64,000 nt of DNA, taken from the NCBI RefSeq assembly GCF_026571515.1, contig NW_026866846.1, positions 124,001 through 188,000 of the forward strand, given 5' to 3'. The position numbers and the translations under genes were made by a program. This DNA comes from Ruditapes philippinarum. Taxonomy: Eukaryota. Position 1 is the first letter of the stretch. Every line of letters begins with the position of its first letter. Shown here in pieces: positions 7,673 through 52,940 of the stretch. The notes below the pieces were generated by a model. It was not told where the DNA came from. It worked only from the letters and a program-made list of their open reading frames with translations, and did not search any database.

Positions 7673-9514
7673 ATGGAGAAGAGTTTATACTTGTATTTCT
7701 TTCAAGCTATTGTAAGTATACATTTACATTTTGCTTGCGTGTAGCCTGAACAAGATTAAGTACTTAATCAGTTTATACTGTGTTTGTAATCACTAACTTT
7801 TGAATTAGCATCAATGGTTTTAGAGAAGGCTGAACGGAACTTATTGTTGTATGTTTGTCTCCTAAAGTTGTCGTGTTTACTTTCACAATTATATGTTATC
7901 AACATATGTTCATTTAGCTAACAACTTCATAAAATTTTCTATGTGGTAAACTAAAAACATTAACTATACAAATTATATAAACGGTTATTTGTGTTGTTAT
8001 TAGTTGTGATACCTTTTTGTTCTCAATATTTACTTTAAAACTGACAAATAAGTGATATTTGGTGCGAAAAAAGTGAAAACATCACATCACATTACAGATT
8101 CACACTTAGACTTATTATTTTTATATAATTATTATTATCATAATTATATATCGTTTTTTGTTTGTTTCTTTGTTTTTGATTTTGTTTTTTGTTTTGTTTG
8201 TTGTTTTTTTTTATATTAATTTATGCTTTAATTGTCAGATCTTCATAGATTTCTTACCTGCTCTTGCTGCTACATACATAGAGTGTAAATGTTTGTATTA
8301 TATAAATTTAGTTATTATATTCTTTTGCAGATTGCATTCGCAATATTGGCACTAACAAATGGACAACCGGGTATGTGTTACTTTTTGTTGACCTAGTTTT
8401 ATTTCTATCATAAATGTACAATGTTTAGTGCTCATACAATTTTATACACATTAATGTTAATGTCAGCGTTTAATATTCGGAAAGTTTTTTAAAACACATT
8501 GTATTATTTAATTATGACGAGCTAACTCCCTGTTATTGACATTTACTTGACTTAAGGTTGTTGTCAGAGAATTAATAACAACATAAATAAAACAAATGCT
8601 TATTCGTCCTATCATGCTTCAATCTTAAGATTATGATCGTAATTTATTGTTGTTTCATAAACATTTGTAAAGTTTTATATTTCCTGTTACCAGGATACGG
8701 AAGAAGACGAATCATACCGAAGAGAATATACCCAAGACATCCTATTGGTGGTGGTATAATTGACCCATATCCTGGAGGATCTATTATAAGCGATCCTTAC
8801 GTTGATCCATACATTGGGACTGATACACTTGGAGGTGGAGTGTACCCTGCAGGAGGTATAGGTGTTATTGGTGGTCGGCGACGCCCAGTTATCGTAGATG
8901 ACAATTCAAGAAGAGATGCTCAGGATATAAATGTATCAAATAATAATGTAAATGTGGAACGTCACACAGGTTCAAATAATGTCCATGTAAATCAAGGTAA
9001 GTTATTCACTTCTGGAACAGTTTCTATAGATTTTATAATAATAGTATTACAAATGTTAATATAAAGAAAAACAATTCATTACAAAATATCTTACAAAACG
9101 CATTTAATTAAATTGAATATAAGTTCCGAACTAAAGAATCTGCAAATCATTCAGTGAAAAGCCTATTTTCATGGTTGGAGTGTTAGGATATAACCTACGT
9201 AAAATAACATTGTCTCTGATGCTTCGGGTATCATTAACGTGCATACATATGACAAATTATTTTACTTCCTATCAATTATTTCAGTTACAAACACTAGGAC
9301 TTGTGAGTGTCAAACTGGTCATATAATGGGAGGACAATGTGGTCTATATCAACAATGTGTATCAGACAGTTCATGTAGTGGCGGAGGAGGAAACGGCGTA
9401 TGTCGGGACACTGGCATTGGCGGTCCCATCATGGATGGTCCCATGATGGGTGGCCCAATTATGGGTGGTCCAGTTATGGGTGGTTTTGATGGACATGGTC
9501 ATGGTGGATGGTGA
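7673..9514 (+). CDS. Cluster gene 1: secreted Gly/Pro/Tyr-rich protein with Asn-rich motif, 6-Cys module and Gly/Met/His tail (203 aa, 4 exons)
   Basis: Exons 7673-7711, 8331-8370, 8694-8996 and 9285-9514, all GT-AG, intron phases 0,1,1, total 612 nt open. Starts MEKSLYLYFFQAIIAFAILALTNG|QPGYGRRR and ends ...CECQTGHIMGGQCGLYQQCVSDSSCSGGGGNGVC...GHGHGGW. TATA at ~7594, AATAAA at 9540. Confidence 0.9.
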
Positions 9515-11274
9515 TAGTATAATTGTACAATTTTTAGATAATAAAATATTTATGTCAAAACTGTATTGCATTTTATTATTCCTTTAATGGTGCCATGTGC
9601 ATGAAATATGATTTTAATATACTCTTTGTAAATGATCCAAGTAAATATATATGAAAAAGTATCGAAATAGAAAGAATGTTAATTTGTTCGTCAAATTTCA
9701 ACACAAGTATGAAGTCTCACATGGAAATGATGCAAACAGCCATTTACATTTGTTGATGCTGATGAATAACGAGTTCGAGAACGTATGTTTGTAAGGCTAT
9801 AAACAATGAAAGAACAACTTTTTGAAATAATGGACCATATCATTCGTCGACTCTCTAATGAACACTAACAATGCATGTCAGAGACAGTTTATTTCTGTTT
9901 AAGTACAAATAATAACGAAAAAATAAAATACATGAAAATAATAATATTTTAATTGTTTTGTTAAACGAACCTGAGTGTAAAGAAACACACTCTATGTGAC
10001 ACGTTTTACCATTGAATAAAGAAAGGTGTTTGTACAGTGGTGGTAGAAACATAATACTTAGTGGTTAATTTAGACCTAAAACAAATAATGACAAATTATA
10101 GAGCTAAAGGTTTATAAAACATGTCTGTCTGACAGCATGCTCTAATTTTCTCAGTGATTGACGAAAGCAAAAAATGAAAGGAGCACAATGATTTAAGTGC
10201 TCAAAAATCTTTATGCCTTTGATAGTGAACTAAAATTAATAGTTTCAAGTGAAAAACTAAGATGCAAATTGCCATTGGAAGTTAATAATAATTAGTTATT
10301 ACATAATTATGTCCCCGAAGAGCGGCATATTAAAATCACACTGTCCGATGGTCTGTGCGTCTCCACTTACACAAAATTCGTGTCCAGATTGTAACTGTGC
10401 CATGTATTGAAATATTTTTAAATAACTTAGCATACATGTCTACCACATCCAGATTAGACCTATGTCTCTACCTCAAAGGTCAATTTAACACTTACAGCTT
10501 GAAAATAGAGAAAATAAGAATCGCTTAAGAAAGCCCAACACGGCAATATTGAAAATGTTTTAGGTTCGGTCTGATTGAGCCTGTTTATGGACAGTACTGT
10601 CAAGTGCAAACACAGCCTTCGCCCCCTAGCACCGGCCGGCTTGAGCAGAATTCAACATTTAACATGAACTGATACAATTTTTAAACATCCGCAGATGTGT
10701 TCATATTGCGGTTATCATGGAATCTTCAATGTGACACGTAAGTGCAATTCCATGAAAAGCGACATATGGTCCCCAAGTACAAAAATGCGTGTGCCCTAAA
10801 CGAGGAAAAGATCGGCGGAATTAAATAAAATGGAATTTTGAAAGGGGATCAGAGGTTATGAAACCTGCATATCACAGCAAAGACGCCAAAAGACAAATTT
10901 ACAAGTTCACATTCTCACAATTAGAGTTTAACATGCATTGAGGAAGTTTAACATAACATAGCATATATGTCTACCATTTCAACACGAAGTGTGTTGTCCA
11001 ATACATCCTTAACTCCAAGATCAATGTCACCCTTATAGTTTAAAGTTTCCCATACTCACAAAAAAGTTTGAAGGTACACATTCGTTTCCGGGCTGTATCT
11101 ATATCATGCAAGGAAGGATTCTATAACAAATTTGTATAATTGTTAACATCAAGACGTCGCGTCTTGTACATAAGATACTTTTTGAGGCAGTTCTTCTTTG
11201 ACATTTTTTAAAAGTTGAACAAGGTCAAAGATTTTTAATTAGAGAAGGAACATAACTTTGCAAGAATGATTTAA

Positions 11275-17200: not shown

Positions 17201-18536
17201 ATATTCATGTTGAGTTGTTCGTTGAGGGGCACTTCCATTGTTACTGTTCATTTTACTATTTCTGTTTGAGTTTTGCACCATTGTGTTTCTGTCTGGTAAA
17301 TACCTTACATTTTCTATGAATAACTTGTCTCTTACAAGTTTTACTCTTTGTCCTTCATCTTTGGCTTCTTTCATCTTTGGATATAGGGTCTTTCTACGTT
17401 CTTCTATTTCTCTTGGAAATTGCTCTCTTACACCATAGTTTGTGCTTTTGAGTATATCTGGAGCAGCAAATTTTATTAGATCTCTCTGTTTTTGTTCTCT
17501 GAATTTGGCAATAATTGGTCTTGGCTTCAATTGGTTTATCATTTTTTTACCAAGTCTATGAACTCTCTGGAAATTTATATCTTCATCAAACTTCATTTCA
17601 TGTTTGATAAATTCACATAAGGTGTTTTCAGTGTTTTCATACTGGCCTTGTGTCTCTGGTTCCTTGATGTTATAAAATATTAGGTTGTCTTGCATGCTTC
17701 TGCACTGTAGATCAAGTATTGTTTCATTTTGTTCATTTTGGTAATCTTTTACTTCTGTTATTTGTGATTGTAGGTGTGCCATCTGTCTTTCCAGGGCGGT
17801 GATTTTGTTACTGTCTTCTGACCTTTCATAATTGATGTTTTCATATAATTCACTAACAACTTCAATACTATGTTGATATTCATTGATTTGTTTGGTGTGG
17901 TGTTGCATGCTTTCATTCAGGCTATATACTTTTTGCCCCATCATTGTTAAATTTTTTTTTGTTTCATGCATGTCTTGTACTTGATTTTCTATAGTATTTA
18001 TTCTTTCATTTTGGTGTCTTTGTAATATCTATCAGATTAACGGGACAGACAAATTATTTTCACACATTATGGATATTTAAGCAACTACATTTTTAATCAA
18101 CCCCGTGGTCGTGCGATTTGCCGCTATGCTTAATTATTTATGTTTCATACATTTTGTTACGTACATTGGCCGACAATTACTTAATTTTTAAAAAAGGCTA
18201 AATGTTGAGATATTCATTAAAGATGTTCGGTAGTTGTACGATACATGTATTACGAGAAGTATGGACCAGTATGGACCTGTAATTCACGGATATATGGAAC
18301 TACCGATTTCCCTCATTGATGCCTCAACAGGGGGCGGAGCGTTATCGATAATCGACAGGTTACGCGAAAGCAGATACAAATAGAATAGGTACCGTTTTAA
18401 AACGTTTAAAAACACATTTTTCGGACTAACTGCTTCCAAAATTAAATCACGAATGTGTTCAGAAAAGGTTGATAAATCTACTTAGCAAAAAATCTCATTT
18501 AAGGTATTTTCAGTGATAATTGACTCCGTTGTCACC
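11275..18536. mobile_element. Kolobok-like non-autonomous DNA transposon hosting the LINE
   Basis: TTAA|GGTGACAAC at the left end and GTTGTCACC|TTAA at the right end. The interval has no counterpart in the paralogous flank downstream of gene 2 (about 25200-25350). Confidence 0.7.
13675..18025 (-). mobile_element. Degenerate two-ORF LINE (RTE-X/CR1-like): L1-type ORF1, partly deleted APE, frameshifted RT
   Basis: ORF1 16970-17971 has a coiled coil and RVHRLG..PRPIIAKF. APE motifs FGDFNSR and STVDYF..SDVH. RT motifs FIDFKQAFD, GVRQGENLSP and LYADD. C-terminal CTLC..DEFHYIFNC. AATAAA and a (TAAA)n tail near 13675-13708. The clade assignment is tentative. Confidence 0.9.
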
Positions 18537-22220: not shown

Positions 22221-22340
22221 CATGTTAATTAGTGGTAATTTATTCGTTAATATTGTAATTAGGCGTAAAAACACGATTTCAACCTTATTAAAACGATACA
22301 TCTTATAAAGGCTGTATAAACGTACACATATATAAAGCTG
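22221..22340 (+). promoter_or_regulatory. Proximal promoter of gene 2
   Basis: CATGTTAATTAGTGGTAATTTATTCGTT followed by TATATAAAGCTG. Confidence 0.65.
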
Positions 22341-22406
22341 TATTGGGAAAGTGTCAACATTAAGCATTTTTCTTTATAACAGTAAATATAATACATTTAA
22401 AAAAAA

Positions 22407-22630
22407 ATGGAAGATACTTTAAGCACATATTTTTTCCGAGCTCTAGTAAGTATCAATTGTAACTTTTTTGTGAATGGATTGATGATGTAAATGTTTATCA
22501 ATATTTCGTCATTCTATAAATAATGTAATAACAAATTTCTGCAAGAAAAAATGTTTATTATTTAACAATCTGGAAAACAACCTTTTTACTGAAACAATGA
22601 TATAATATCACCCTAAGTTAAAACAAAATG

Positions 22631-22679
<49 letters not shown>

Positions 22680-23940
22680 AATTACGGATAAATGCAATAC
22701 AAAAGCTTATACCATTCAATGGACACCTTCATTTCGGAATAAACAAAAATGTCTTGTAAGTCAAATTTTTCTACTTTCTAATTTCTATTGTAGAGAAAAT
22801 GTTTAAAATATTCAATACTCTATTACAGACTGTACTCGGAATCTTTGCATTAACAAATGGACAATTCGGTAGGTGAAATATTTGATTTATTTCTAAAAAT
22901 AGTTCCTTTAAAATTAATATTTGTATGTTTTCATGCACATTAAAATGAATATCATCTTTCAGATTACAATAGCTCAAGTCCGGACTTTTTTCCTAATTCA
23001 TAAAACATATTCAAACATATTCATGTTAACTTTAAAATTGTTTGAGTTAAACGATTTCTTTGAGTAGAGTTGTGACTCATACCTTACCTTGCTTTTCAGG
23101 GGGATATGGGAGAAGACGAATTATACCGAGGAGAATATACCCAAGATATCCTATGGGCGGTGGTTTAATTGACCCATATTCTAGAGGATCTATTATAGGC
23201 GATCCTTACGTTGATCCATATATTGGGACTGATACACTTGGAGGTGGCATCTATCCTGGAGGAGGTATAGGTGTTATTGGAGGTCGACGACGCCCAGTTG
23301 TCGTAGATGACAGTTCGAGGAGAAATGCTCAGGATATAAATGTATCAAACAATAATGTTAATGTGGAACGTAGCACAGGTTCAGATAATGTCCATGTAAA
23401 CCAAGGTAAGTGATTCACCTTCTTAATAGTTACTGTAGATTTTATAATCAAAGCTGTACAGATGTATGTTAATGTAAAACAAACAAAAAAACATTCATGA
23501 TATTCAAATATTTTACAAAACGCGTCAAATTAAGTTCCGAACTAAAGCATCTACACAGCAGTCTGGTAAAAGCCTATGTTATGGTTGGAATGTAAAGATA
23601 AAATTCATGTACTATAACATTATCTATGTTACTTAGGATATCATTAATGAACATACATTTAACCAAACATTAAATCATGGATTCATTTCAGAATTCAAAT
23701 TCAGCATTGTTCCTATTAATTATTTCAGTTACAAACACTAGGACTTGTGAGTGTCAAACGGGTCATATAATGGGAGGACAATGTGGTCCATATCAACAAT
23801 GTGTGTCAGATTCATGTAGTGGCGGAGGAGGTAATGGAGTATGTCGGGACACTGGCATTGGCGGTCCCATGATGGGTGGTCCAGTTATGGGTGGCCCAGT
23901 TATGGGTGGTTTTGATGGACATGGTCATGGTGGATGGTGA
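22407..23940 (+). CDS. Cluster gene 2 (198 aa, 4 exons), paralog of gene 1; probable chimera
   Basis: Exons 22407-22445, 22829-22868, 23100-23405 and 23729-23940, GT-AG, phases 0,1,1, 597 nt open. Starts MEDTLSTYFFRALTVLGIFALTNG|QFGGYGRRR. TATA at ~22330. Confidence 0.9.
22634..22677. repeat. (ATTT)n microsatellite in intron 1 of gene 2
   Basis: Direct reading. Confidence 0.95.
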
Positions 23941-29675: not shown

Positions 29676-29796
29676 CATGTTAATGAGTGGTAATTTATTC
29701 GTTAAGATTATAATTATGCGTAAAAACACGATTTCAACCTAATTAAACCGATACATCTTATAAAAGTTGTATAAACAGTATACATATATAAAGCTG
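29676..29796 (+). promoter_or_regulatory. Proximal promoter of gene 3
   Basis: CATGTTAATGAGTGGTAATTTATTCGTT followed by TATATAAAGCTG. Confidence 0.65.
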
Positions 29797-29866
29797 TATT
29801 GTGAAACGTTCAACATTAAGCATTTTTCCTTACTACAGTAAATATTATACATTTTAAAAATAAAAA

Positions 29867-32800
29867 ATGGAAGAAACTTTTAGCATATATTTTTTCCGAG
29901 CTATGGTAAGTATTAATTTTTACTTTTTGTGAATAGATTGATAATATAAATGTTAATAAATTTTACGACATTTTGAAAATGATTTTAGTAGTAAACAATA
30001 TGTAATATAATGACAAATTGCTGCAACGAATTTTTTTTATTTAATTTACTTAAACAATCATATAATATCACCCTAATTAAAAAAAAAATGTTTATTACAA
30101 TTTGTCAGTATTCAACAATTTGATTTTATTTCCACTAAGCATCTTTTTTTTCTTTATTCATTTATTTAACAATCATTGATAAATGTAATACAAAATATAT
30201 CAACTTTGTTCACGATGCGTAATCGTTTCTGGCTGACGCTGATTTGGAATACTTCCCTGTTCCTGAACTGATTTTCTCAAAATATAGTGCTTTTTGTAAA
30301 ATGTTTTGTTCAGTTATGAATTTTAGGATGTACTTTTATGACAACCTCGTAAGTTGTAGGCTTACGTAATACAAATTCATTACCGGACAAATCATTTTAC
30401 TTAAACCATTTAATTATTGCGGATTGAATTTTTCTATAATATGATCATGAAATACCTGAAAAAATAAAGATAATAATGACTTTTTGGCAATTTTATACTA
30501 GTGTTTACTACAACTTCACTGGCATGTGAAATTTGTTTTTCGATTCCAACTGATAAAAGACCGTTAACCCATTACTTCATGAGCATTTTGTGAAAAATGG
30601 CTGTTTTCATTGAAAAGTCTCCCGTTACAAGTTCAAACTGCTATAATACTATAAAAACTGCTTCAACACTAATCAAACTTGGCACAAATGTTGACTGGAC
30701 CATTGCCCTTGCAACAACATGCTCAGGCTTAAATTTTCTGTAACCATGGCAACGAGGGGACATCTCAAAATTGCCAAAAATCACTATTTTGCGTTGATTT
30801 TTTCCATCAAAATTGATTTCAAAGTGCTGCAACTTCTCAATGGATTGAGATAGAGTCAAATGCTTTTCAGCGTTGGTTACACGTTACCTTATGATCAATC
30901 TGGGGTCATTTACAGCCTCTCACAAGTCCAAAATTTTCTTGGCGATGAGGGGGACTCCGCCCCCCTTCAAACCCCCCAAACAGAAGGGGGCACATCCCCC
31001 TTCTGGCAACCCCCTGATGTATCTTTTGGTTGGGGGGCCGCGCCGAAAAAGAGGTCACTTTTTTAACAACATTTCTCAAACAAAAACAAGTGTTTGGGGC
31101 CTAAATAAGGCATTTTTTCATCATTTGAGACAACAAAAAGGGGGGGGGGGGTGAAAAAGGCGTTAAAAGGCGTGTATATGAAGTAATGGGTTAACAAACC
31201 TTATAAAGTTACATATTATTGCCTTAAACATTGCAATGTTCCGTGCAAGTAGAATATTCAAAGACTTATAGTCAAGCTCAAAATCTAATTTATCTCTGTC
31301 AATCCGGTGAAAAAATCCAAATCAGTTCAGGAACGGGGAAGTTTTCCAAATCAGCCCGAAACGATTACGCACCGTGTTGTTCATATAAATCAATAAGAAC
31401 ATTTATCAACAACTTATTAAATAAGTAAAAATTTAAATCATAAAATGGGCATCCACATTTAATAAAAAAATATTTGCAAGTCATATTTTGCTGTTTAATT
31501 CTACTATCGAGAAAATGTTTTAAATATTCAACTCTCTTTTTTTCAGATTGTACTCGGAATCTTTGCATTAACAAATGGACAATTCGGTAGGTGATATATT
31601 CAAGATATATCTAGTAAAATTCTTTTAAAATTCAAATTAAAATGAATATGATCTTTCTTTACAGCAGATTTATATTAGTTCAAAACAAAGATTTTGTCCT
31701 CCTCCATTAAACACACAACTTTGCAAAAAGCATCGAACCATAACCAAATACAAACTTGACCTGCGCATTTCTATCACATATCCATATGTCCAAAATGAGT
31801 TGGATGTGTACATGGGAAGATACTGAACGGAAACTGAACATTTTTCAAAGTTCAAGAGGTCAAAAATCATCGAACCATGGCCAAATATTAACTTGACCTG
31901 CGCATTCCTATGACATATCCATATAATAGATTGAAGTTGAATGTATACAACTGTTGGGGAGATAATTAACTTAAAATTTCTTATTTTTTCAAAGTAAAAG
32001 GGGCATAACTCTGCCAAAAATCATCAAACCATGACAAAATTCGAACGTTATCTGCGCATTTATTTGACGTATCAATATGTTAAAAAAAATGTCAGTTAAA
32101 TGTGTACAAAGTTTGGAGAGAAACTGAAAGGAAACTGAAAATTTCTGATTCTTTGCAAAGAAAAGGGGCATAACTCTGCAAAAAAACATCAAGTTCTGAC
32201 CAAATTCAAACTTGACCTGCACATTCCTTTTACGTATTCATATATCATACTTGAGTTGAATATGCATAACTGTTAAAGAGATAATGAACGCAAACTGAGA
32301 ATGTCTCTAAGGGGCATATCTCTGTTAAAAATCAAAGGACCATGACCAAATTCGAACTTGACCTGCATTTTGTTATGATATATAGATATGTCAAATTTGA
32401 GTTAAATGAGTATAATTTCTGCTAAGATAATGAACGGAAACTTATGATACGGAATGACGGTATGACGGAACTACCATAACATGGTTGGGGCATAAATATT
32501 CATATTAATCTTACAATTGGTCTAAGTTATACGCTTTTTTTGAGTAGAGCTGTGTCTCATAACTAAACCTTGCATTTCAGGGGGATATGGGAGAAGACGA
32601 ATCATACCGAGAAGAATGTACCCAAGATATCCTATGGGTGGTGGTATGATTGACCCATATTCTAGAGGATCTATTATAGGCGATCCTTACGTTGATCCAT
32701 ACATTGGGACTGATACACTTGGAGGTGGAATCTATCCTGGAGGAGGTATAGGCGTTATTGGAGGTCGACGACGCCCAGTTGTCGTTGATGACAGTTCAAG

Positions 32801-33619
32801 AAGAAATGCTCAGGATATAAATGTGTCAAACAATAATGTTAATCGAGAAGTTCGTACAGATTCAAATAACGTCGTTGTAAATCAAGGTAGGTGCCCGCAT
32901 TCTTTATGGTGTCCGTGTTATAACGCTTATTTTACCAATATTATCATTCTTATTATAAAGGTTGCAATGATGTAAAAATAAAGAGTCATCAGTCAGTTTT
33001 AATCATCAGAAGTATGTTTTATTTAATCAAGTCATTTATTTACTTTAAAGCAAATCAGATGTGTAAAATTTAGTATATAATAAACTCATTAAAATATTGG
33101 ATTGAAAAGTTTGGTACAAAAGAGCTATTGAAACATCATTTGCATGACTGGTATAAAACATTTCAGAAATTCTAACAACATTGAAAAAACCATTTCAATA
33201 ATTATTTCGGAACTTTGTTTTGAATCACAGACAGCATATATCAGTTCCTATCATCTATTTCCTACGTAATAATTACTGGTAGCCAACACGATAACTACTT
33301 ATGATTTTAAGATTCAGCATCACTCGAGTTCTAATAAACAATTCCTTTGTATTTTTTTCCAGTTACAAACACTAGGACTTGTGAGTGTCAAACTGGTCAT
33401 ATAATGGGAGGACAATGTGGTCCATATCAACAATGTGTGTCAGACAGTTCATGTAGTGGCGGAGGAGGAAACGGAGTATGTCGAGACACTGGTATGGGCG
33501 GTGGTTTTATGGATGGTCCATTTGTGGGTGGTCCCGTCGTTGGCGGTCCCATCATGGGAGGCCCTGGTGGTTTTGTTGATGGACATGGTCATGGTCATGG
33601 TGGAATGAGGATTGTTTAA
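29867..33619 (+). CDS. Cluster gene 3 (213 aa, 4 exons)
   Basis: Exons 29867-29905, 31547-31586, 32581-32886 and 33363-33619, GT-AG, phases 0,1,1, 642 nt open. Starts MEETFSIYFFRAMIVLGIFALTNG|QFGGYGRRR and ends GHGHGHGGMRIV. Introns 1 and 2 are expanded by transposons. AATAAA at ~33643. Confidence 0.9.
30211..31376. mobile_element. Non-autonomous Transib/RAG-like-type DNA transposon in intron 1 of gene 3
   Basis: About 60-bp TIRs start CACGATGCGTAATCGTTTC (left) and CACGGTGCGTAATCGTTTC (right, reverse complement). 5-bp TSD TTGTT at 30206-30210 and 31377-31381. Confidence 0.8.
30568..31190. mobile_element. piggyBac-type non-autonomous element nested in the Transib-like element
   Basis: TTAA|CCCATTACTTCAT ... 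ATGAAGTAATGGG|TTAA: perfect 13-bp TIR, CCC terminus and TTAA TSD. Confidence 0.85.
31685..32495 (+). mobile_element. Helitron/Helentron-like non-autonomous element with internal ~160-bp tandem units (intron 2 of gene 3)
   Basis: About five degenerate units of GGGGCATAACTCTG...ACCATGACCAAATTCGAACTTGACCTGC, ending GGGGCATAAA. Absent from intron 2 of gene 2. Boundaries are approximate. Confidence 0.6.
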
Positions 33620-35258: not shown

Positions 35259-35396
35259 CACTGATACTCCTGAAGGTGGGGTCTATCTTTATCCTCCAGG
35301 AAGTATGTGTATTATTGGAGGCCCAGTTGTAAAACATGACAATTTTAGAAGAAATGTAATGACATAATGTAACAAACAATAACGTTTATTGAGAAA
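35259..35396 (+). pseudogene. Degenerate remnant of exon 3 of the cluster gene family
   Basis: actgatactcctgaaggtggggtctat...tattggaggcccagttgt...agaagaaatg...aacaataacgtttattgagaa aligns by eye to gene 3 exon 3 (32709-32849) with indels and no intact frame. Confidence 0.75.
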
Positions 35397-36380: not shown

Positions 36381-38947
36381 GCTCGATACTTTTCGGCAGT
36401 TGTATTGCTATTCTTTTCAAAAAAAAATCATTCTTAATTCCTAAAACTGTCATTTGAAGGCACATTATGAATCAGAAATGAATACATTTTTATTTCTTTC
36501 TTTCTTTTTTTTCTTTCTTTATTTCTTTAAAAGGGAAACACGAGTTTAATAACGTTTAAACAATGAGTTAAGAGTATTTTAAATGCTCAACATCTGGAAA
36601 AAAGTAGCACTGAATTTGATTTTATTTAGTAGCAAAATGTAAAATAATGAGTATTTTGACTAACATACAAACTGCTAAATCACTATTAATGTATTAATTG
36701 CCAAAACGCAGCAGAAGCAACTGATAATAATTGACAATGAGTAACTTTTTGGAAACTAACTATAACAGAAGCCCCAAAACAAAATGCCTTTGAGGAATAA
36801 AAATAAAATAATAACTTGGGGAAATAGGCCTTTACAAAATTGAAATAAAATGAAATAAGGCCAAATAAGCCATGGTTATGGTTTTAACAATTAAAGAATA
36901 GACACATTATTAAAGATACCTGAATATGCATTTGAGCAGGGTTAATTAAATGGTCTGAATAAAGTATTCGTTCCCTTTCCCCATTGGCTGTAAGTGACAT
37001 TGACGTAAACTTCGATTTAACCACAGACGCAAAACAAAAATAACGTTCATCAAATTATTTTCTTACTAAATAAACAACATAAGGACCATATTCCCTCATC
37101 AGCTGTCAAATGTTATTGTTCTTTCGCAATTTATGTTTCACATCAAAGCATGAAAATGTATTCAATCAAAATTAATAGCGCTTAAGAAAATACTGTGTGG
37201 CCACCATCAACATGTTTAAACAAACGTCAACATGTAGTTTGGATGGCATTAATTAGCTTATAAATTTTCCAAGTGAACATAAACGAGGACAATTACAAAA
37301 AAAAATGAATTGTTTTTAAACTTTAAATAAAATACCATGAAATGTTCAACAGAATACGTTAAAGTAAAATATATAAGAACAATTAAGTATGCCTGCGAAA
37401 TGATCGTGAAATATATGAATATCAAATAAGAGTAAATAAGGACAATTGCATCTACTGAATGAGTAAATATGTTTTATATATATTTGTAGATGCTCATAAG
37501 ACCCGGCGTAATTGATCACACACAGTTTTAATAGCTATATATATCAAAGGGGACAATAAGAAGAACATCACTTAGGTGTAACTAAGGGTCGGTCATTTTT
37601 CTTCACACTGCACAAGTCACAGAATTATGGTCATCCGAATTAAACATTTCTGATAAGTAAACTTTTCTTGTGTCCGTGCAAGAGATTATAGTATGTTACT
37701 TTTAGTCATTTAAAATAAAAGGTCAATTCATACCGCAGTAAAAATTATTATGTGACGTGTGCAGTGTCACTTACTTTAATATCATTCCCTGCGGTCTGGA
37801 GACCGCAGGGTATTGGTACGCGTTTAACTTTTGAGGCATGGAGGAGCACGTGGCATGTTTTCGGTACATGGAGGAGCATGTGATCTGTAAACCGTATATG
37901 ATTGGTTAATTGACCTTTTCGAAAACCAAGCTAAATACCGTTTGCCGGTACGTTACGGATTTACCTGTAGGGAATTAGTCCGAATTACACCTAATTGAGA
38001 ACAAAAATCTATTACGTGATATTTCTAATTTTCTATAATTATTTTACCGTTTAAGGTGGAAAAACTTGAATGATGTGTTTGAAAATTATCAATGTTTCTT
38101 TAATAAATATCTCAAATTTTACATACAATAAATTGTTTATACTGAAAATCTACAAAATTAAAATATTCGTAGTGGCATCTGCCATAATAAATAGAGATAT
38201 ATTCTGCGTAAACTAGTGTGTTTACTTTATTTATTTTTTGCTCGGAATTATTCATAAAATGGTAGGCCTATTTAATCATTTTCTTAAAAAGAAATAATTG
38301 TTTTATGTTCGACCTTCTCCGGTCTTCAACGGTCACATGCAGTTTCCAAAGACCTTCTTCTATATTGTTCGATTATTGTCAACTATATTCCTGTTACAAA
38401 CGTTTATTTATCCCCCCCCCCCAATAATGTTGAAAATAGTGAAATGAAATATCTTTATATCATTAAAATGTTCACCGCAGGAAACCATTTTACTTGTAAT
38501 GTCGTTTGTAAGTTTAATACGTTTTAAATAACCAAATACATATTCCATATTCCGTTCAAATTAAATAATTGCAGAAATTAAAATTTGAAGACTAATACTC
38601 AAAATAAAAGTGCTTTTTATAGGACGATTTCAATATAAAGTGAAAACTAGTAACATAAGGCGAGTAATAAATTGTGAAAAAAATGATAAGTAACAAAAAC
38701 CATGTAAATAGCCGTTATTATATACGTAAGTAAACTGGTAAACGTGCGTTAATATGTTTATTTATTCGTAAGTAATGGTGATTCATGTTAATTATTCGTC
38801 TTTTTTTCTTTAATTATATACGAACTAAAATCTCATTAACTTAAAAGTAATACGTCTTAAATTGTTTTTCAAACGTAACTTTTGTGTACATTTGCTTTCG
38901 TTTCCTTATTTGTTTTATATTACTGAAAAGCGTTGGTCTAGTTTGAA

Positions 38948-41900
38948 ATGGATAGAAAAACGTACTTCTTTCAATTTCTGGTAAGTTAATAATGTATCTT
39001 AGTTAAAAATTGTCTTGATAATATTGATAGCATTTGTTCTTATTTGATAAAGTTGACTTACTGATGCTAAAAATGAAAGGGTGAGTGATAGACTGCTAAA
39101 ACAAACAGAGCCTGAAACAGTTTCAATACAGTCATTTCGGATGTTCTACTAGTATTAATCTCATTTACTTTAATCATTGGAAATCGGACCATTATGTTAT
39201 ACATCCAGTACCTATTCAAAGTTGTGTGAAATTTTGTTCTTTACTTTCTTTCTTTCTTTCTTGTTTTCTTCAGATTGTTTTTGGTGTGCTGATTCTTACT
39301 AATGGACAAATTATTGCACAAGGTAAGTCTTGAATAAGCTAATGCTTTTATCAACAAATCTTTTACACAGAGTCAACACAGACGCCTTCTGACAACTTTG
39401 AAATGCAATTTGTTCATTTGAATATTCTATGTGAAGTCTCTTTTTATTGTGTGCAGTCTATTAAAAAAGCGTTTACATTTGACAGTCATGTACTTTAAGG
39501 AATTATGAAACTTAATGCAATATATTATATGTTTATATTACAATTTATTGTATTTTATGCACTTTTAGTTCCTAAATGGAAATGGTCAAAGTCTTAAAGC
39601 TAGCAAATTCAATGTTTGCTGCTAGAGTGGTATATTTTTAACTACCTTTGTATGACCCTTTTGTATATATAAAACATATTTTCTTGGAAAAAGATCATTA
39701 TGTGTCACTTACTCCACAGCTATATATGACCCTGATAAGACGTTAGTGACGACTTTTGCCACACATGTGTTTACTAACGTGTCTTTTTAAGTTAGATTAT
39801 TTGGATTTTCAAACTGTTGTTTCCTTTTTATAGTTTTCATTATGTTTGTGTTCACTGCTGAAACCTTTTAGAAGTATATCTGAACGATTTGTGTGTACTG
39901 GAGATTGAAAAAATGCACTTTTCTTGAAGATGTTGAAATATTAACATTTCAATGAAATTTATATATGTAAGGCATTGTCCAAATTGACGACAAAAACAAT
40001 ATATATGGCTAAAAGAAATATACAACGTGTAATGTTTTACATTTTACAGAGTCTTACGGAAGTAGAAGAATAATTTCACCTGGACATCCTCTAGGTCTGG
40101 GTCCATTTGTTGATTCATACTCACAAGGGTCTGTTATGAGCAGTAGAAGAATCACAGGCGATCCCTACGGTAATCCTTACCCCGATCCGTACATGGGAGG
40201 CGGTGTTTTACCAGTTGGAGGCGGTATGATGCCTGTTGGGGGCGGTGTTTTACCTGTTGGAGGCGGTATGATACCTGTTGGAGGTAGTGCGTTACCAGTT
40301 TACCCAGCAGAAAATTACCCGGTAGGCGGTATGCTTGGCGGCATCTTTGATGGAAGACGTCACCCATCGATTGTCGGAGATCGGTCAAGTACTAGCGTTC
40401 AGACTATAAATGTATCAAACAAAAATAATAATCATCGCTTTCAGACAGGATCTGGTAATGTCGTCATAAATCAAGGTAATCAAATGTTTAAATATAAATA
40501 ATTTTCTTCAAAATCCTTATCTATATGAAGATTTTTAAAAATACTTTTTGCACCAAACATGGATATTTGACAGCAGTAGTGTTGTAACATGACAATCCCT
40601 GATAATTAATACTAAATATTTTACATGTATATATAAACATGCAATACATGTAAAGCTGCGGTCTCACTTACTCCCGGCAGAGCCCAGGGCCACCCCGGTA
40701 AGTTACCGGGATGATCCGGGGTGAAATTATTGTTGCGGTCACACTAACCCGGCAGCACTACGGTAATTCCCAGCTAACCACCCTGGATGCTCTCCCGACC
40801 ATCCAGGCAGATCCCAGATGAAGCTACGGTGTATGCCGGTGTTTCTCCGGTCGTTCCCGGATGACGCCGGAAGAGCCCTGGTCGACCTAGGCAGAGCCCC
40901 AGTCGATCCAGGCAAAGCCCCGGCAGAGGCCAGGACGATCAAGGCAGAGTCCTTGTAGAACCCCGGTAAATTTAAAACGCGCGAAAATGATTACATTGAT
41001 ACATAATTTTAATTTAATATTATATCTATTGTTCCGGAACAGTATTTCATGATGATTTTCTGAAAAATTCTTATGCAAGACTGGATAAAAGGGAAATGGG
41101 AAGGATTTTAATACAAAGAAGTGAAATCATCGCAAATTGTCGTGATATTTTTTGAAATGAACGGGTTTTGCGGGGCTCTACCGGGATCAACCGTAGCTCC
41201 ATCGTCATCTTCCGGGACTCTGCCGGCATTCACCGGGGCTCTGCCGGCATCCACCAGGGCTCTGCCAGCATTCACAGGGGCTCTACCGTAGCTCTACCGG
41301 CTATATCATGCCCCGAATCATCCCCAGTGTGTGCCGGCAGAGATTCGGTACTTCCCCGGTGTAACCCCGGTCGTTCCCGGCAGAGCTAAGGATGAAGCCG
41401 GCAAAGCTATACTTCCCGGATCATCGCGGTGATTTCCATCCGGGGTCGAATGCCTGTTGTTCCCGGATCATCCCGGACGTTGCCGGCAGAGTAACGGATG
41501 TACACCGGTTGTTCCCGGTCGTACCCCGGTCGTTCCCAGATCACCCCGGACGTCTACCGGGGCTCTACCGGAGCTCTGCCAGGATGTTAGTGAGATTGTA
41601 GCTTAATGAGATCATATTAAAGGACGACTTAAGATGCGGGAAGAAATATGTGTGAAAACTACAATTCTACAATTCTTGAATACACTATAACGATAAAGTC
41701 AATTGTGCTTATTAAACTTTAATACTTCACCATAGATGTCAAGTGTTGCGTCGCACCTGTAAAAGTTTGGCCCTTATTTCATTTCAATGTTCTATTATTC
41801 TGGTCCTTCGGGATCATTGTTTTCAGCACGTTAGTATTGAAGATTCTAAAGCTGCTACTGCTAAGCTTTAGGATTATGCAATTTTCCATTATCTCTCCTC

Positions 41901-42372
41901 AATCAAACTGAGTCTGCAATTTTTATATAATATTGTTGTTTCAATGCTTCTGAGGGATCATCCATTTTCAGGACTTTTTAATAATAACCATGATTACACC
42001 AACACATTTAGGTATACTTATCATAGTGTTAGTCGCGGTGGGGCCAGCAATGTGTCAGTATCGCCGTTTAAACAAAACACGAAAACCATCGGTTAGGTTT
42101 AGATTTCTGTTTCGGTTTGTTTTGTTTTTTGTTGTTGTTGTTTTTGTTTTGTTTTTTTGTTGTTTTTTTTAAACCAAATCAGTCAAAACCATATAGTTAT
42201 ATCATATACATATTCCGTTTTTGTTTCAGTTTCAACTAACGGAAGAAGTTGTTCTTGCTATGTTGGAATGCCTGACCAATGTTACCCACAAGTGTGTATC
42301 CCGGACAGTAGTTGTTCAGGTGCAGGAGGCAATGGTATATGCGGTAGCGGACAAGGAATTATGATGATATAA
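38948..42372 (+). CDS. Cluster gene 4 (216 aa, 4 exons), divergent paralog with GGG(V/M)xPV heptad repeats
   Basis: Exons 38948-38980, 39274-39322, 40050-40475 and 42230-42372, GT-AG, phases 0,1,1, 651 nt open. Starts MDRKTYFFQFLIVFGVLILTNG|QIIAQESYGSRR. The last exon encodes CSCYVGMPDQCYPQVCIPDSSCSGAGGNGIC. Confidence 0.85.
40654..41603. mobile_element. PIF/Harbinger-like MITE in intron 3 of gene 4
   Basis: TAA|AGCTGCGGTCTCACTTAC ... GTTAGTGAGATTGTAGCT|TAA. GC-rich CCGG/GGCAGAGC subterminal repeats in inverted orientation surround an AT-rich core. Confidence 0.75.
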
Positions 42373-49700: not shown

Positions 49701-50564
49701 TAAGCTATGCCCACTTTGTTTCTTTTTCCCCGATTTATCTTTTTGTTCAGGTTAATTTCTAAAAAAAAGGAAACTACCACAGTTATTCACTTAAAGATTT
49801 GGTATATTTGTTCACTGCATTTCTTAAGTACTGATCTCTATAAAAGGCATTCTAGCTCAATAATCTCCCTTTTTATTATTTCTTAAAAACCATCACAAAT
49901 ATTCACTTCCAACTTGAAATACTTGTTAAATATAAAGGCAAAATGTCTGCCAAACAGTTAATCAGGGTTATGCCTCCTTTTTTACTTTTTTGTAAGGACT
50001 GACAATAGTGGGGCGAGCTGCGAAAAGCTCTTGCTTAAATGAAACTTGGTACCTGCAAAATTCGTTGTATGAAAATCGGACAAAATGTATGGCAAAGCCT
50101 AGAAAGTCTTGTATTTGATACAACATCGGATAACAGATCACAGTTGGTTCTTTTTTGTTGTTTTAAATAAATGAAAGAGCACATTAACCTTTTTTACTTT
50201 AAATCATGTTAATTCATTGTAATTTATTCATCAGTCAGATTATTTAAATCTACAAAAATAAAAACTTTTAAAGAAGACACTTCATTTTACATTTTTGATA
50301 TATTAATAATGCGTGCAAATCTACTTCATTTTAATTATAAATGAAAGAAGAGACCGCCTTGAATTTATATTTTATAATGGATGGAAATATGCGAGCACTT
50401 TTCATATTATTGCTGGTAAGTTTGTTTTTACATCTTATATTTCCATAACCAAAATGATAATGACTTGTTAATAAAATCCAACTGATAATATAACTGAACT
50501 TTGAATTCCCATCGGGCATTGCAAAATCTTTCATTTTTCTATGATATCTAATATATGTAAACGT

Positions 50565-52940
50565 ATGAAAATGCGGAAACAGGGGTACTTCTTCATNNNN
50601 NNNNNNNNNNNNNNNNNNNNNNNNNNNNNNNNNNNNNNNNNNNNNNNNNNNNNNNNNNNNNNNNNNNNNNNNNNNNNNNNNNNNNNNNNNNNNNNNNNNN
50701 NNNNNNNNNNNNNNNNNNNNNNNNNNNNNNNNNNNNNNNNNNNNNNNNNNNNNNNNGTTTTTTTTTATTTATCTATTTTTATATTATTTATTTATTTATT
50801 TATTTATTTCATTATGTCCCCTATTTCCAGAAAAGAAACTGAGAACGTTTCCCATTTTAATGGCATATGCTGCATTTCAAATATCTAACTTTATCAACAT
50901 AGGTACCGCTGTAGGTTCGAAACCCGCCATTATGCACTTTGGATTATGTAATGTGAGGAAGCTATCCTACTAACTTACGAAATGTCTGTGATTCTACTCT
51001 TATGTCCACTTGTGCCTGAAACAATGCAAGGAGGGGCACCTAAGGTCTCCTTCTATCAATAAAGCTGGAAAGTCGCCATATGACCTCGAAGTGTGTCGGT
51101 GAGACGTAAAACTGAATAAAACACACACACACACACACACACACACTGACAAAAACTGGAAAGTCGCCATGTGACCTCTATTGTGTGAGCGCGATATAAA
51201 ACTGAACACAAAATAAAATAAATAGGAACCTCGGCCAAATGGTCCCACAAGTCAGCTATCATGAATAGTCAATAAGATACTCAGTAAAGTAAAGTATTTT
51301 ACAACATTAGTAGTTTCTCCTATACTCAAATTATTTACTGAATTGTTCATACACTTAATTGTACATACAGGTGGTATTTGGATTACTGGCGCCAACAGAT
51401 GCGCAATACGGTCGAATGGGACGTAAGTGTTTTATTTAGGCTTTATTTGTATGACTCAAAGTATCTAAGATGTCACAATATACTGAACATTAATCTCACA
51501 TATCAAAATCGGGCTAAACAAAATGTCGTCTTACTTGTATCTCATGCGTCTGCTAGATTAGAATACTGATGTTCTGAAATAGAGCATTTCTTGTGCAACA
51601 AAACATTTAATTTTACATAAATAGGTAATATTTAACTAATTTCAAGAATCCTTTTGCAAATGGTGTTAACGTAAAGTCATTGTTAACTGCGGAGTATTCT
51701 GATTACAAAAAGAGTACGCATGATAGGTATAAAATATGTACGTTCATCGAACATGTAACAGATTGCACTAGGGAAATTCATTATTGTTTACAATTTTTCA
51801 CCAACTTTCATAATATGTTTACATTTAACGCTTATTTTTGACATCAATATGGTTTTCAAAACAATTTTTAAAATGTGTTGATTTTCTCTTCAATTAATAA
51901 GGTGGGTACGGGATGAGACGTTTCATTGCACCTCGGCCGTTTTACCCAAGATACCCTGGTGGACATGGTCATCTCGTTGATCCTTTCTCTCGAGGATCTG
52001 TCTTTGGATCCGGGATTATAGGTGATCCTTATTCCGATCCTTACATTGGGGATGGCGTACTTCCATACGCAGGAGGTGTTTACCCTACAGGAGGCGTGGT
52101 TACTGGCCTTGTAGGAGACGGACGCCGCCCAGCTGTTATAGATAACCAATCAAGTGACAGAGTAGAGCATATAAATATTCATAACAGCAATAACAATCAA
52201 CGAATTCAAACAGGGTCTAATAACGTCGCTGTAAATCAAGGTATTTCTAAAATTATGTGATGCCTATTTTGTCATGTTGTATCAAAAACATTCCATTACG
52301 TGTTACTCTGGATAACTTATCTTTAAGATTATTATGTAGTTCAGAAATAGTGAGCTGATGCGATTTATTCATTTTGTTTAATGATTTATTCATTTTGTTT
52401 AATTCGAAGACGGACTGGAAAACTGTAAGAAGAAATGATCAAATCTTTTAAATTACGTAAAACTTTTCTTTGGTATTTATAAAAAAAATACTATATAACA
52501 AACGTGCAAATACATTTCTACATTTTTTTTCTATATTTGCCTTGATGTGAATGACAGTGCGTCGTCCAGAATATGAGAAAGTCATTGTTATAATTTCTAG
52601 AATTATAACATTTAAACGTGTGCCTTTCACATCATTTTAGTGCGTGAAACTTGAGCTCCTATGTCAACCTAGAGAATATAGATTCTATTTTCATGTGTAT
52701 AAGTATCTGCACGCAGAGATGATAAAGGGTCACCCACACAGGCAAAGCATTGATATGCTGTCCTGAGCAATCGATCAAAGGAATTTTAGAGTTTTTAAAA
52801 CCTTAAGTTTATTTCGTATATTTTCAGTGACCGGAGGAAGTGGTAACCAATGCCAACCATGTCCGGCTGACGGTTATTGTTCGGGTGGAAGGTCATGCCA
52901 GTATAGTCAATCATGTCCTAATGAGATCGTCTGCGTGTAG
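50565..52940 (+). CDS. Cluster gene 5, most divergent paralog; exon 1 runs into the assembly gap
   Basis: Exon 1 from 50565 or 50571 (MKMRKQGYFF..., cut by Ns at 50597), exon 2 51371-51422 (VVFGLLAPTDAQYGRMG), exon 3 51902-52240 (AAG acceptor), exon 4 52828-52940 (VTGGSGNQCQPCPADGYCSGGRSCQYSQSCPNEIVCV*). The exon 4 frame is absent from the ORF track. Introns 2 and 3 are phase 1 as in the paralogs. Confidence 0.8.
50597..50756. other. Assembly gap (160 N)
   Basis: Run of N; it truncates exon 1 of gene 5. Confidence 1.
50905..51220 (+). mobile_element. tRNA-derived SINE with duplicated 3' tail around (AC)n, in intron 1 of gene 5
   Basis: B-box GGTTCGAAACC. The tail CTGGAAAGTCGCCATRTGACCT occurs twice (about 51065 and 51156). 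Confidence 0.75.

What the first reader, a model, noticed from the sequence alone, without database searches (positions are those of the whole stretch)
7673..52940. Tandem family of five secreted modular proteins (Arg / Gly-Pro-Tyr / Asn-rich / 6-Cys / Gly-Met-His) not recognisable as a named family
Seen: five co-oriented genes share a 4-exon, phase 0-1-1 layout (intron 1 of gene 5 is obscured by the gap). The signal peptide is split over two micro-exons (YFF...LTNG|Q), followed by YGRRR, DPY repeats, an Asn-rich block ending NQ, and a last exon with six Cys. Known: Gly/Tyr-rich low-complexity secreted proteins are typical of bivalve shell matrix (shematrins, prisilkin) and adhesives, where Tyr can be converted to DOPA and His binds metals. 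Inference: this is a lineage-specific structural or adhesive protein family combining self-assembly, cross-linking and disulfide modules.
Basis: partly seen in the sequence, partly recalled or inferred. Interest (0 to 1): 0.8.

Follow-up and report, generated by a model that had tools for sequence, protein, structure and literature searches.

The report
Clam-specific secreted modular protein gene array
Five neighbouring Manila-clam genes, half of a ten-gene array, encode a secreted modular protein family seen so far only in venerid clams and listed only as "uncharacterized"; it is an ordinary kind of mollusc-specific secreted family, and its probable role in building extracellular matrix is untested.

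Summary
The window is from Ruditapes philippinarum. It carries five co-oriented genes, each with four exons, GT-AG introns, phases 0-1-1 and an intact reading frame (180-216 aa).

- **Support for the models:** RefSeq proteins returned by the searches match my models of genes 2, 3 and 4 exactly. Transcript contigs from two studies show the exon 2/3 and exon 3/4 joints of gene 2. Letters specific to gene 3 appear in RNA reads.
- **The gap:** it lies inside intron 1 of gene 5 and touches no coding sequence.
- **Extent of the family:** the five genes are the downstream half of an array of ten co-oriented genes on one contig. They form one clade and share a 25-nt motif about 165-190 nt upstream of the start codon.
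- **Hallmark:** a gapless 38-residue Asn-ladder module (RPxVVxDxS...INIxNxNxN...SxNVxVNQ), followed by a small domain with four or six cysteines. Fast-evolving Arg/Pro/Tyr/Gly and Gly/Met repeats flank these.
- **Relatives:** an exhaustive HMMER search gave 19 hits. Every named one is an "uncharacterized" protein of R. philippinarum or Mercenaria mercenaria. There is no Pfam, PDB, fold or literature match.

Function is untested. I favour a self-assembling extracellular matrix protein (about 0.45) over a host-defence or hormone precursor. The family is real and unnamed but ordinary in kind.

The parts
7673..9514 (+). Gene 1 (203 aa). Exons 7673-7711, 8331-8370, 8694-8996, 9285-9514.
   Evidence: GT-AG introns, phases 0-1-1, coding length 612 nt. 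Searched exon by exon only; no RefSeq protein for it came back. Exon 3 also appears as a metagenome ORF call, P0003.
22407..23940 (+). Gene 2 (198 aa), RefSeq LOC132733978. Exons 22407-22445, 22829-22868, 23100-23405, 23729-23940.
   Evidence: One search gives the model, which is identical to P0002. One search shows the spliced joints 22868/23100 (X3) and 23405/23729 (X1, X3).
29867..33619 (+). Gene 3 (213 aa), RefSeq LOC132733977. Exons 29867-29905, 31547-31586, 32581-32886, 33363-33619.
   Evidence: One search gives the model, which is identical to P0028. Letters specific to gene 3 occur in RNA reads and contigs laid on gene 2.
38948..42372 (+). Gene 4 (216 aa), RefSeq LOC132733979. Exons 38948-38980, 39274-39322, 40050-40475, 42230-42372. 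Exon 3 carries four PVGGG(V/M)x heptad repeats.
   Evidence: One search gives the model, which is identical to P0001.
50377..52940 (+). Gene 5 (180 aa). Exons 50377-50415, 51371-51422, 51902-52240, 52828-52940. It has no Gly-Met-His tail.
   Evidence: One search gives the model, searched exon by exon only. The upstream motif lies 172 nt before the ATG. P0010 is a metagenome ORF fragment of its module.
50597..50756 (.). Assembly gap (160 N) inside intron 1 of gene 5.
   Evidence: It lies between exon 1 (ends 50415) and exon 2 (starts 51371), so no coding letters are affected. Not filled.
8882..8995 (+). Conserved 38-aa Asn-ladder module of gene 1 (3' end of exon 3).
   Evidence: gapless alignment A3.
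23291..23404 (+). Asn-ladder module of gene 2.
32772..32885 (+). Asn-ladder module of gene 3.
40361..40474 (+). Asn-ladder module of gene 4.
52126..52239 (+). Asn-ladder module of gene 5.
7483..7507 (+). Shared 25-nt upstream motif, CATGYTAATnnnTnGTnnTTTnTTC, 190 nt before the ATG of gene 1. Candidate cis-regulatory element with TAAT cores.
22221..22245 (+). The same motif, 186 nt before the ATG of gene 2.
29676..29700 (+). The same motif, 191 nt before the ATG of gene 3.
38784..38808 (+). The same motif, 164 nt before the ATG of gene 4.
50205..50229 (+). The same motif, 172 nt before the ATG of gene 5.

Best explanation
**Shown.** The five genes are intact, and at least two are transcribed. 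They are a species-lineage expansion within an array of at least ten genes that encodes a secreted modular protein family. The family is known so far only from venerid clams.

Each protein has the following parts:
- a cleavable signal peptide split over two micro-exons, with a conserved Gln at the likely new N-terminus;
- a fast-evolving, mostly basic Arg/Pro/Tyr/Gly low-complexity stretch of variable length;
- a gapless, strongly conserved 38-residue Asn-ladder module;
- a small disulfide domain with four or six cysteines, encoded by the last exon;
- often a Gly/Pro/Met(/His) repeat tail, ending in Gly plus hydrophobic residues and Ile/Val.

**Inferred.** These are extracellular matrix building proteins secreted by the mantle epithelium, destined for the shell organic framework, periostracum or hinge ligament.
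- The Asn/Val module would pair as beta strands and let the molecules self-associate.
- The disulfide knob would stabilise or cross-link them.
- The flexible Gly/Met/Pro repeats would act as spacers or elastomer-like segments.
- The Tyr, His and Met residues would offer sites for oxidative or metal cross-links.
For: **Gene reality**
- Gene models.
- Identity to RefSeq proteins.
- Spliced GT..AG joints in contigs from two studies. Exon depth is in the hundreds, up to 1290, against 0-52 in introns.
- Gene 3 letters in RNA reads.
- Purifying selection: dN/dS at most 0.45 in exon 3 and among G1-G3.

**Secretion**
- One N-terminal hydrophobic segment, with a 12-residue Kyte-Doolittle mean of 2.0-3.3, and no second one.
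- The models predict a helix over residues 3-25.

**Family and array**
- Ten module copies, all on one contig and one strand.
- The window genes form one clade with SH-aLRT 98. Older members pair with Mercenaria genes.
- The module aligns without gaps and has six invariant positions across 16 sequences.

**Structural reading (indirect)**
- Short Gly/Met repeats arose independently at different places. G4 has PVGGGxx heptads in exon 3. G1-G3 have GGPxM pentads in exon 4. Mercenaria P0007 has MGQGGx hexads. That is typical of matrix and elastomeric proteins, not of hormones.
- Methionine-rich regions are a shared feature of insoluble shell and ligament proteins of a pearl oyster (PMC7591529).
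- Most of the protein is predicted disordered, apart from the Cys domain at pLDDT 72-84.
- Expression is very uneven between samples: abundant in X1 and X3, 12 reads in X21, none in X23. This fits a tissue-restricted secretory product.
Against: - No tissue, proteome or localisation data could be obtained. The run names are coded, and no paper mentions these genes.
- The composition is only mildly biased: Gly 19-22%, Tyr about 4-5%, Met at most 5%. That is far from shematrins or abductin.
- The Mercenaria relatives are strongly basic and rich in Arg and Pro, with pI 9.7-9.9. That suits a defence peptide equally well.
- The Asn module is predicted with low confidence, pLDDT 44-49, so its beta pairing is conjecture.
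- X1 and X3 are not on record as RNA. Their RNA nature is inferred from exon-only coverage and the joints.
Confidence: 0.45

Rival explanations
1. Host-defence precursor. The basic Arg/Pro/Tyr N-terminal stretch, the disulfide-rich C-terminal domain, or both, are released or act as antimicrobial peptides. The tandem expansion would then reflect an arms race.
For: - Basic Arg/Pro/Tyr stretches sit right after the signal peptide, for example ...RRRIIPRRIYPRYP... These resemble insect and mammalian Pro/Arg-rich peptides (from my own knowledge).
- The Mercenaria members have pI 9.7-9.9, with 13-15% Arg and 9-10% Pro.
- An Arg often lies 1-2 residues before the first Cys.
- The weak fold neighbours are knottin- or defensin-like mini-proteins.
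- There are lineage-specific expansions in both clams.
Against: - The best-conserved part is the neutral Asn module, not the basic or Cys-rich parts.
- The Cys domain is neutral to acidic, pI 4.2-6.0.
- dN/dS stays below 1 everywhere, with no sign of diversifying selection.
- Gly/Met repeat tails are unusual for antimicrobial peptides.
- The fold matches, at Z about 2 and E above 5, are at noise level.
Confidence: 0.2
2. Processed peptide precursor. After the signal peptide is removed, a short pyroGlu...Gly-Tyr-amide peptide is cut at the GYG-RRR site, with Gly as the amide donor and the basic residues as a convertase site. The rest of the protein is a carrier.
For: - GYGRRR follows the predicted cleavage site by 2-10 residues in G1-G3, in three Mercenaria genes and in one unnamed transcript.
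- The Gln at the predicted new N-terminus is nearly invariant.
Against: - The site is not conserved across the family. G4 has YGSRR and G5 has YGMRR, neither with Gly next to the basic pair. Gene D and Mercenaria LOC123553996 lack it.
- The second basic site is always followed by Pro (RRP, RP), which convertases disfavour (from my own knowledge).
- The strongest conservation lies downstream, in the supposed carrier.
Confidence: 0.08
3. Divergent cytokine of the interleukin-17 type, suggested by a weak match of the Asn-rich strand to human IL-17A.
For: The module profile matches IL-17A chains at E = 0.15-0.29 over 18 residues. Bivalves are known to have many IL-17 genes (from my own knowledge).
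Against: - The match is short, Asn-biased and not significant.
- Pfam's IL-17 model gave no hit even at E up to 10.
- The cysteine spacing and the absence of the conserved IL-17 core do not fit.
- The fold search found no cystine-knot cytokine.
Confidence: 0.02
4. Annotation artefact or decaying pseudogene array with no product.
For: Genes 1 and 5 have no RefSeq protein among the hits. The intron 1 joint was not seen in contigs.
Against: - All five frames are intact, with canonical splice sites.
- dN/dS is well below 1.
- Three of the five match RefSeq models, and spliced transcripts are abundant.
- The upstream motif is conserved.
- There are orthologues in another genus.
Confidence: 0.03

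Closest known systems
Repetitive low-complexity shell matrix families of pearl oysters (shematrins, KRMPs, prisilkin)
   Same: They are secreted, tandemly duplicated, fast-evolving and lineage-restricted. They combine Gly/Tyr-containing low-complexity stretches with basic patches. This is the same kind of gene family in evolutionary terms (from my own knowledge of that literature).
   Different: No sequence relationship was found in an exhaustive search. Gly (19-22%) and Tyr (about 4-5%) are far lower. Those families have neither the 38-residue Asn module nor the C-terminal disulfide domain.
Methionine-rich insoluble shell and ligament proteins (abductin of scallops; LMP and NU-5 of Pinctada; PMC7591529)
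   Same: They have short Gly/Met(/Pro) repeats, like the GGPxM, PVGGGxx and MGQGGx repeats here. They are extracellular and insoluble, and they are thought to act in scaffolds or as elastomers.
   Different: The repeats here are only a short tail or insert of 15-45 residues, not the bulk of the protein. Overall Met is at most 5%. No homology was detected, and ligament expression is untested.
Proline/arginine-rich linear antimicrobial peptides (for example oncocin, Bac7, bivalve myticalins)
   Same: There is a short basic stretch with alternating Arg, Pro, Tyr and Ile right after the signal peptide.
   Different: The resemblance is recalled from memory and was not tested. Here the stretch is followed by about 150 more residues that carry the family's conserved parts. 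No release site is conserved.
Other unnamed tandem families of secreted Gly-rich or Cys-rich proteins in the same clam genome (scan notes s1-803732, s1-810580, s1-807808)
   Same: The genome is the same and so is the pattern: tandem arrays, signal peptides, low-complexity regions plus small disulfide domains, and relatives only in a few clams.
   Different: These are different sequences: eight-Cys cationic tails or amidated peptides there, an Asn-ladder module plus a neutral six-Cys domain here. I did not compare them directly.

Membership tests
Shematrin / prisilkin / KRMP type Gly-Tyr-rich shell matrix proteins | Very high Gly (about 30% or more) and Tyr content in XGnX-type repeats. | tested here: not met
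   Gly is 19-22% and Tyr about 4-5% in P0001 and P0002. Repeats are short and local.
Shematrin / prisilkin / KRMP type Gly-Tyr-rich shell matrix proteins | Detectable sequence similarity to family members. | tested here: not met
   The profile search of 1.84 billion representatives returned only venerid-clam and unnamed hits. Low-complexity regions are hard to match, so this is weak negative evidence.
Abductin / Met-rich ligament proteins | The protein is dominated by Gly/Met/Phe decapeptide-type repeats. | tested here: not met
   Gly/Met repeats span only 15-45 residues, and Met is at most 5% overall.
Abductin / Met-rich ligament proteins | Presence in the hinge ligament. | not testable with these tools
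   No tissue labels or proteomes were reachable. Run names are coded.
Interleukin-17 (Pfam PF06083) | Match to the IL-17 domain model with its cystine-knot cysteines. | tested here: not met
   No Pfam hit at E up to 10. There is only an 18-residue Asn-rich match to IL-17A at E = 0.15.
RHIM-type amyloid motif (Pfam PF12721) | Core (I/V)-Q-(I/L/V)-G tetrad and a match to the RHIM model. | tested here: not met
   The module ends V-x-V-(N/S/T)-Q and is followed by V, S, T or G. No Q-x-G core occurs in any member. There is no Pfam hit.
EGF-like / EB-module cysteine domains | Match to the domain model and its cysteine spacing. | tested here: not met
   The EB module scored E = 4 and 8 bits against a cutoff of 24.3. 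The spacing is C-x-C-x9-10-C-x5-C-x4-5-C-x8-C in G1-G3 and varies among members.
Defensin / knottin-type disulfide mini-proteins | Fold similarity of the C-terminal Cys domain. | tested here: inconclusive
   The domain is modelled at pLDDT 72-84. The best matches are Evasin-3, PA1b and omwaprin at Z 2.0-2.1, with Foldseek E above 5.
Secreted proteins with a cleavable signal peptide | A single N-terminal hydrophobic core followed by small residues at -3 and -1, with no other membrane segment. | tested here: met
   The 12-residue Kyte-Doolittle mean is 2.0-3.3 at residues 6-23 and at most 1.6 elsewhere in 13 members. The conserved end is ...(T/I)(N/D)(G/A)|Q. A dedicated predictor was not available.
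Amidated neuropeptide precursors | Conserved Gly plus di- or tribasic site flanking a conserved short peptide in all members. | tested here: not met
   GYGRRR occurs only in a subset. G4, G5, gene D and LOC123553996 lack an amidation-type site.

The most novel reading that the evidence does not exclude
The gapless 38-residue module (RPxVVxDxS...INIxNxNxN...SxNVxVNQ) is a new extracellular self-assembly domain. It would be an Asn/Gln-ladder beta-hairpin or beta-arch that stacks into amyloid-like fibres. The ten-gene array would then supply a set of functional-amyloid matrix proteins, with interchangeable elastic or basic arms, for the clam shell, periostracum or ligament.
Probability: 0.12. Interest if true: 0.65.

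Novelty: new member of a known kind. Interest (0 to 1): 0.35.

Why it matters
Mollusc shells, ligaments and adhesives are built from fast-evolving, lineage-restricted secreted proteins, and most of these still lack names or assays. This array gives a compact, well-defined case with four useful features:
- ten paralogues with clear exon-to-module correspondence;
- orthologues in a second commercial clam genus;
- a strongly conserved short module that can be made synthetically and tested for self-assembly;
- a shared upstream motif that could mark the secreting cell type.

If the proteins turn up in the ligament or periostracum, they would add a new building block to the known set. If they do not, the family is one more entry in the long list of uncharacterised clam secretome genes. 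It does not overturn anything known.

Tried and rejected
- **Pfam:** scans of all exon-3 and exon-4 peptides and of ten relatives gave only sub-threshold noise: EB module, DUF4106, Kazal_C7, AtDEF-like.
- **PDB sequence search:** the full profile gave nothing below E = 0.6. The module profile gave an 18-residue match to IL-17A at E = 0.15. I rejected it as Asn-biased and unsupported by Pfam or fold data.
- **ESM Atlas:** no usable neighbour.
- **AlphaFold2:** P0002 is mostly disordered, mean pLDDT 46.7. In P0013 only the Cys domain is confident.
- **Fold searches:** Foldseek and VIA-align gave nothing above noise.
- **Literature:** searches for the LOC and XP identifiers, for six family motifs, and for clam mantle and shell proteome papers found nothing that names these genes. 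The supplements of two Mercenaria omics papers hold none of the identifiers.
- **Third word-index search:** using the wider alignment, it added no new named species.
- **First own-genome search:** using gene 2 exon 3, it found only the five window copies. The module profile was needed to see the other five.
- **Joined sequences:** I built and searched none. Genes 1 and 5 were handled exon by exon. Full-length work used only RefSeq proteins that the tools returned.
Full report
**What the window is.** The first protein search returned a RefSeq protein of Ruditapes philippinarum that is 100% identical to the translated exon 3 of gene 4. The genome tool places the window at 124001-188000 of a 389-kb contig in a 1.4-Gb assembly. 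The DNA is AT-rich, 28-35% GC, and is interspersed with retrotransposon fragments.

**Checking the observation.** I read the five loci. I then fixed the exon borders by their splice contexts in a script, translating each exon in its own frame without joining exons.
- All five genes have four exons, GT..AG introns and phases 0, 1, 1.
- Coding lengths are 612, 597, 642, 651 and 543 nt, all multiples of three.
- The proteins P0001, P0002 and P0028 that the searches returned are RefSeq LOC132733979, LOC132733978 and LOC132733977. They are identical to my models of genes 4, 2 and 3, including the split codons.
- No RefSeq protein for genes 1 or 5 came back. Those two rest on sequence evidence alone.

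Window genes were searched exon by exon, and full-length work used only database proteins returned by the tools.

**The gap.** The only N run is 50597-50756. It lies between exon 1 (50377-50415) and exon 2 (51371-51422) of gene 5, inside intron 1. No reading frame crosses it. What it leaves open is the intron's length and whether exon 1 really belongs to the gene on the other side.

Three things support the linkage:
- Exon 1 has the family's size (39 nt), phase and donor site.
- Exon 2 has no start codon of its own.
- A 25-nt motif found upstream of every other gene in the window sits 172 nt before this ATG.

**Transcription and splicing.** Public runs that hold gene 2 have 29-40% of its sampled words, which matches its exonic share of 39%. 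I laid reads and contigs on 22200-24300.
- Contigs of X3 join 22868 to 23100.
- Contigs of X1 and X3 join 23405 to 23729.
- Both joints are GT..AG and lie exactly at the predicted borders.
- Exon depth reaches the hundreds, up to 1290, against 0-52 in the introns.
- The intron 1 joint was not seen. Exon 1 is only 39 nt and the contigs are short.
- X1 and X3 are RNA only by inference, because they are not on record as such.
- X21 is recorded RNA and gave 12 reads from 4% of the run. X23 gave none. Expression therefore differs strongly between samples.
- Most of the differing letters in these reads and contigs are the letters of gene 3 at the homologous positions. The loose ends in X1 also read like gene 3. 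Gene 3 is therefore transcribed too.

Run names are coded, so I could not learn the tissue.

**Selection.** Pairwise dN/dS is 0.23-0.45 for exon 3 and 0.07-0.70 for exon 4. dS is about 0.2 among genes 1-3 and about 0.9-1.5 or saturated against genes 4 and 5. The copies are kept by purifying selection. Genes 1-3 are recent duplicates.

**The family is larger than the window shows.** A profile of all window exons plus the first hits was searched against 1.84 billion representative proteins. It gave only 19 hits at E ≤ 0.001.
- The named hits are all "uncharacterized" proteins. In R. philippinarum they include two further loci, LOC132733972 and LOC132733988, on the same contig. In Mercenaria mercenaria they are LOC123553993, -96, -97, -98, -99 and LOC123555334.
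- The rest are unnamed transcript or metagenome ORFs.

What all the hits share is a 38-residue stretch that aligns without a single gap in 15 of 16 sequences: RPxVVxDxS-x6-INIxNxNxN-x6-SxNVxVNQ. Ser9, Asn20, Asn22, Asn24, Val34 and Gln38 are invariant.

Searching the clam's own genome with that profile found ten copies. All are on this contig, on the + strand, between 99 and 176 kb. Five are the window genes and five lie just upstream.
- Gene D (LOC132733972) has the same four-exon layout, with the signal peptide split over two micro-exons.
- Gene C (LOC132733988) has an extra exon that encodes a four-Cys segment.

A tree built on exon-3-level rows for genes 1 and 5 puts the five window genes, plus one metagenome fragment, in one clade with SH-aLRT 98. 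It pairs older members with Mercenaria genes. The array therefore predates the split of the two genera, and the window holds a later expansion.

**Anatomy of the proteins.**
- *Signal peptide.* Every member has one N-terminal hydrophobic segment and no other. It ends in small residues before a nearly invariant Gln.
- *Variable stretch.* Next comes a stretch of about 35-105 residues rich in Arg, Pro, Tyr and Gly. In genes 1-3 it has a net charge of +6. It is the least conserved part.
- *Module and Cys domain.* The Asn module closes exon 3. The last exon opens with a domain that has six cysteines in the window genes. Their spacing varies between members, and two Mercenaria members have four.
- *Tail.* Genes 1-3 have GGPxM repeats plus GHGH. 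Gene 4 has a short GQGIMMI. Gene 5 has nothing. Mercenaria LOC123553999 has six MGQGGx repeats. Gene 4 has a separate set of four PVGGGxx repeats inside exon 3.
- *C-terminus.* Many members end in Gly, then hydrophobic residues, then Ile or Val.
- *Predicted structure.* AlphaFold2 predicts disorder for nearly everything except the signal helix and the Cys domain, which reaches pLDDT 72-84 in LOC132733972.

**Comparison with what is known.**
- Pfam has nothing for any exon or relative.
- The PDB sequence search gave nothing for the full profile. For the module it gave an 18-residue match to IL-17A at E = 0.15. I reject that match. It is Asn-biased, the IL-17 Pfam model does not hit, and the cysteine pattern is different.
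- Fold searches with the better model gave only Z of about 2, to knottin- or WAP-like mini-proteins.
- The ESM Atlas gave no neighbour.
- No paper mentions the gene identifiers or the motifs, and neither do the supplements of two Mercenaria omics papers.

**How it most likely works.** It is shown that these are real, transcribed, conserved genes for secreted proteins. The function is inferred. I favour an extracellular matrix role at about 0.45, for four reasons:
- Gly/Met-containing short repeats have arisen independently at three different positions in different members. That is what one sees in structural and elastomeric proteins.
- Methionine-rich regions are the common feature of the insoluble shell and ligament proteins of a pearl oyster (PMC7591529).
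- The conserved module alternates Val/Ile with Asn in a way that suits paired beta strands with an Asn/Gln face.
- Expression is abundant in some samples and nearly absent in others.

Against this reading:
- The overall composition is only mildly biased.
- The module is not predicted with confidence.
- No localisation data exist.

A host-defence precursor is the main rival, at about 0.2. The basic Arg/Pro/Tyr stretches, especially in Mercenaria, and the small disulfide domain fit it. The pattern of conservation does not, nor does the absence of diversifying selection. A pyroGlu...GY-amide prohormone (about 0.08) fits GYGRRR in a subset, but the site is not conserved across the family.

**Verdict.**
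- "Unnamed, lineage-restricted secreted family" is supported. "Structural or adhesive" remains a reasonable but untested guess.
- Such tandem secreted families are common in this genome, as other notes of this scan record, and in molluscs generally. This is therefore a new member of a known kind.
- The 38-residue module and the shared upstream motif are the most useful handles for follow-up.

Noticed in passing
contig G000:C15333 99040-122950 (L015, L014, L013/L017, L007/L020, L008), just upstream of the window: Five more co-oriented family genes (A-E) lie upstream. Genes A-C carry an extra N-terminal four-Cys segment and a GGATGPGTG stretch. In gene A the module is followed, in the same exon, by Pro-rich VAGHGNQGIPLGF repeats instead of a Cys domain. 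Gene E ends about 1 kb before the window starts.
   Followed up: partly
window 7483-7507, 22221-22245, 29676-29700, 38784-38808, 50205-50229: The 25-nt motif CATGYTAATnnnTnGTnnTTTnTTC has TAAT cores like homeodomain sites. It occurs only five times in the window, always on the + strand 164-191 nt before a family ATG. None is expected by chance, and none is found upstream of genes A-E. Note that the pattern was derived from these five sites.
   Followed up: partly
window 9495-9520 and 23921-23946 versus 33596-33619: Genes 1 and 2 end ...GHGHGGW*. Read one base out of frame, the same letters would give ...M-V-I-V*, which matches the family's usual hydrophobic C-terminus (gene 3: GGMRIV*). A one-base difference therefore seems to have cut off the ancestral end in genes 1 and 2.
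   Followed up: partly
window 22407-23940: The 5' flank and exons 1-2 of gene 2 are closest to gene 3: 87-92% in repeats D13, D16 and D17, and 80% in D11. Its 3' end is closest to gene 1: 93% in D15, exon 4 dS of 0.19 against 0.45, and the shared GGW* end. This agrees with the scan's chimera note.
   Followed up: partly
window 23251-23747 (run X1, record 4): A 497-nt contig at depth 52 runs unspliced through intron 3 of gene 2. It is either retained-intron or precursor RNA, or DNA in that run.
   Followed up: no
window 23846-23912: One X1 contig skips 65 nt inside the GGPxM repeat region of exon 4. The ends are GG..TT, so this is not an intron. It is probably a repeat-length allele or an assembly slip. 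One X3 contig has CAG inserted behind 23810. That restores the Ser codon which genes 1 and 3 have and gene 2 lacks.
   Followed up: no
window 2800-3733: A head-to-tail array of a 283-nt unit, a little over three copies at 99-100% identity.
   Followed up: no
window 3727-5061 (+), 14059-17971 (-), 45191-46555 (-): Long ORFs that look like reverse-transcriptase or LINE fragments lie between the family genes.
   Followed up: no
window 30200-31400 and 31725-32410: Intron 1 of gene 3 holds an insertion of about 1.2 kb with terminal inverted repeats. Intron 2 holds five copies of a tandem unit of about 150 nt.
   Followed up: no
window 40640-41600: Intron 3 of gene 4 holds a GC-rich element (about 45% GC against 30% around it). 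Its ends are reverse complements of each other, like a foldback or MITE.
   Followed up: no
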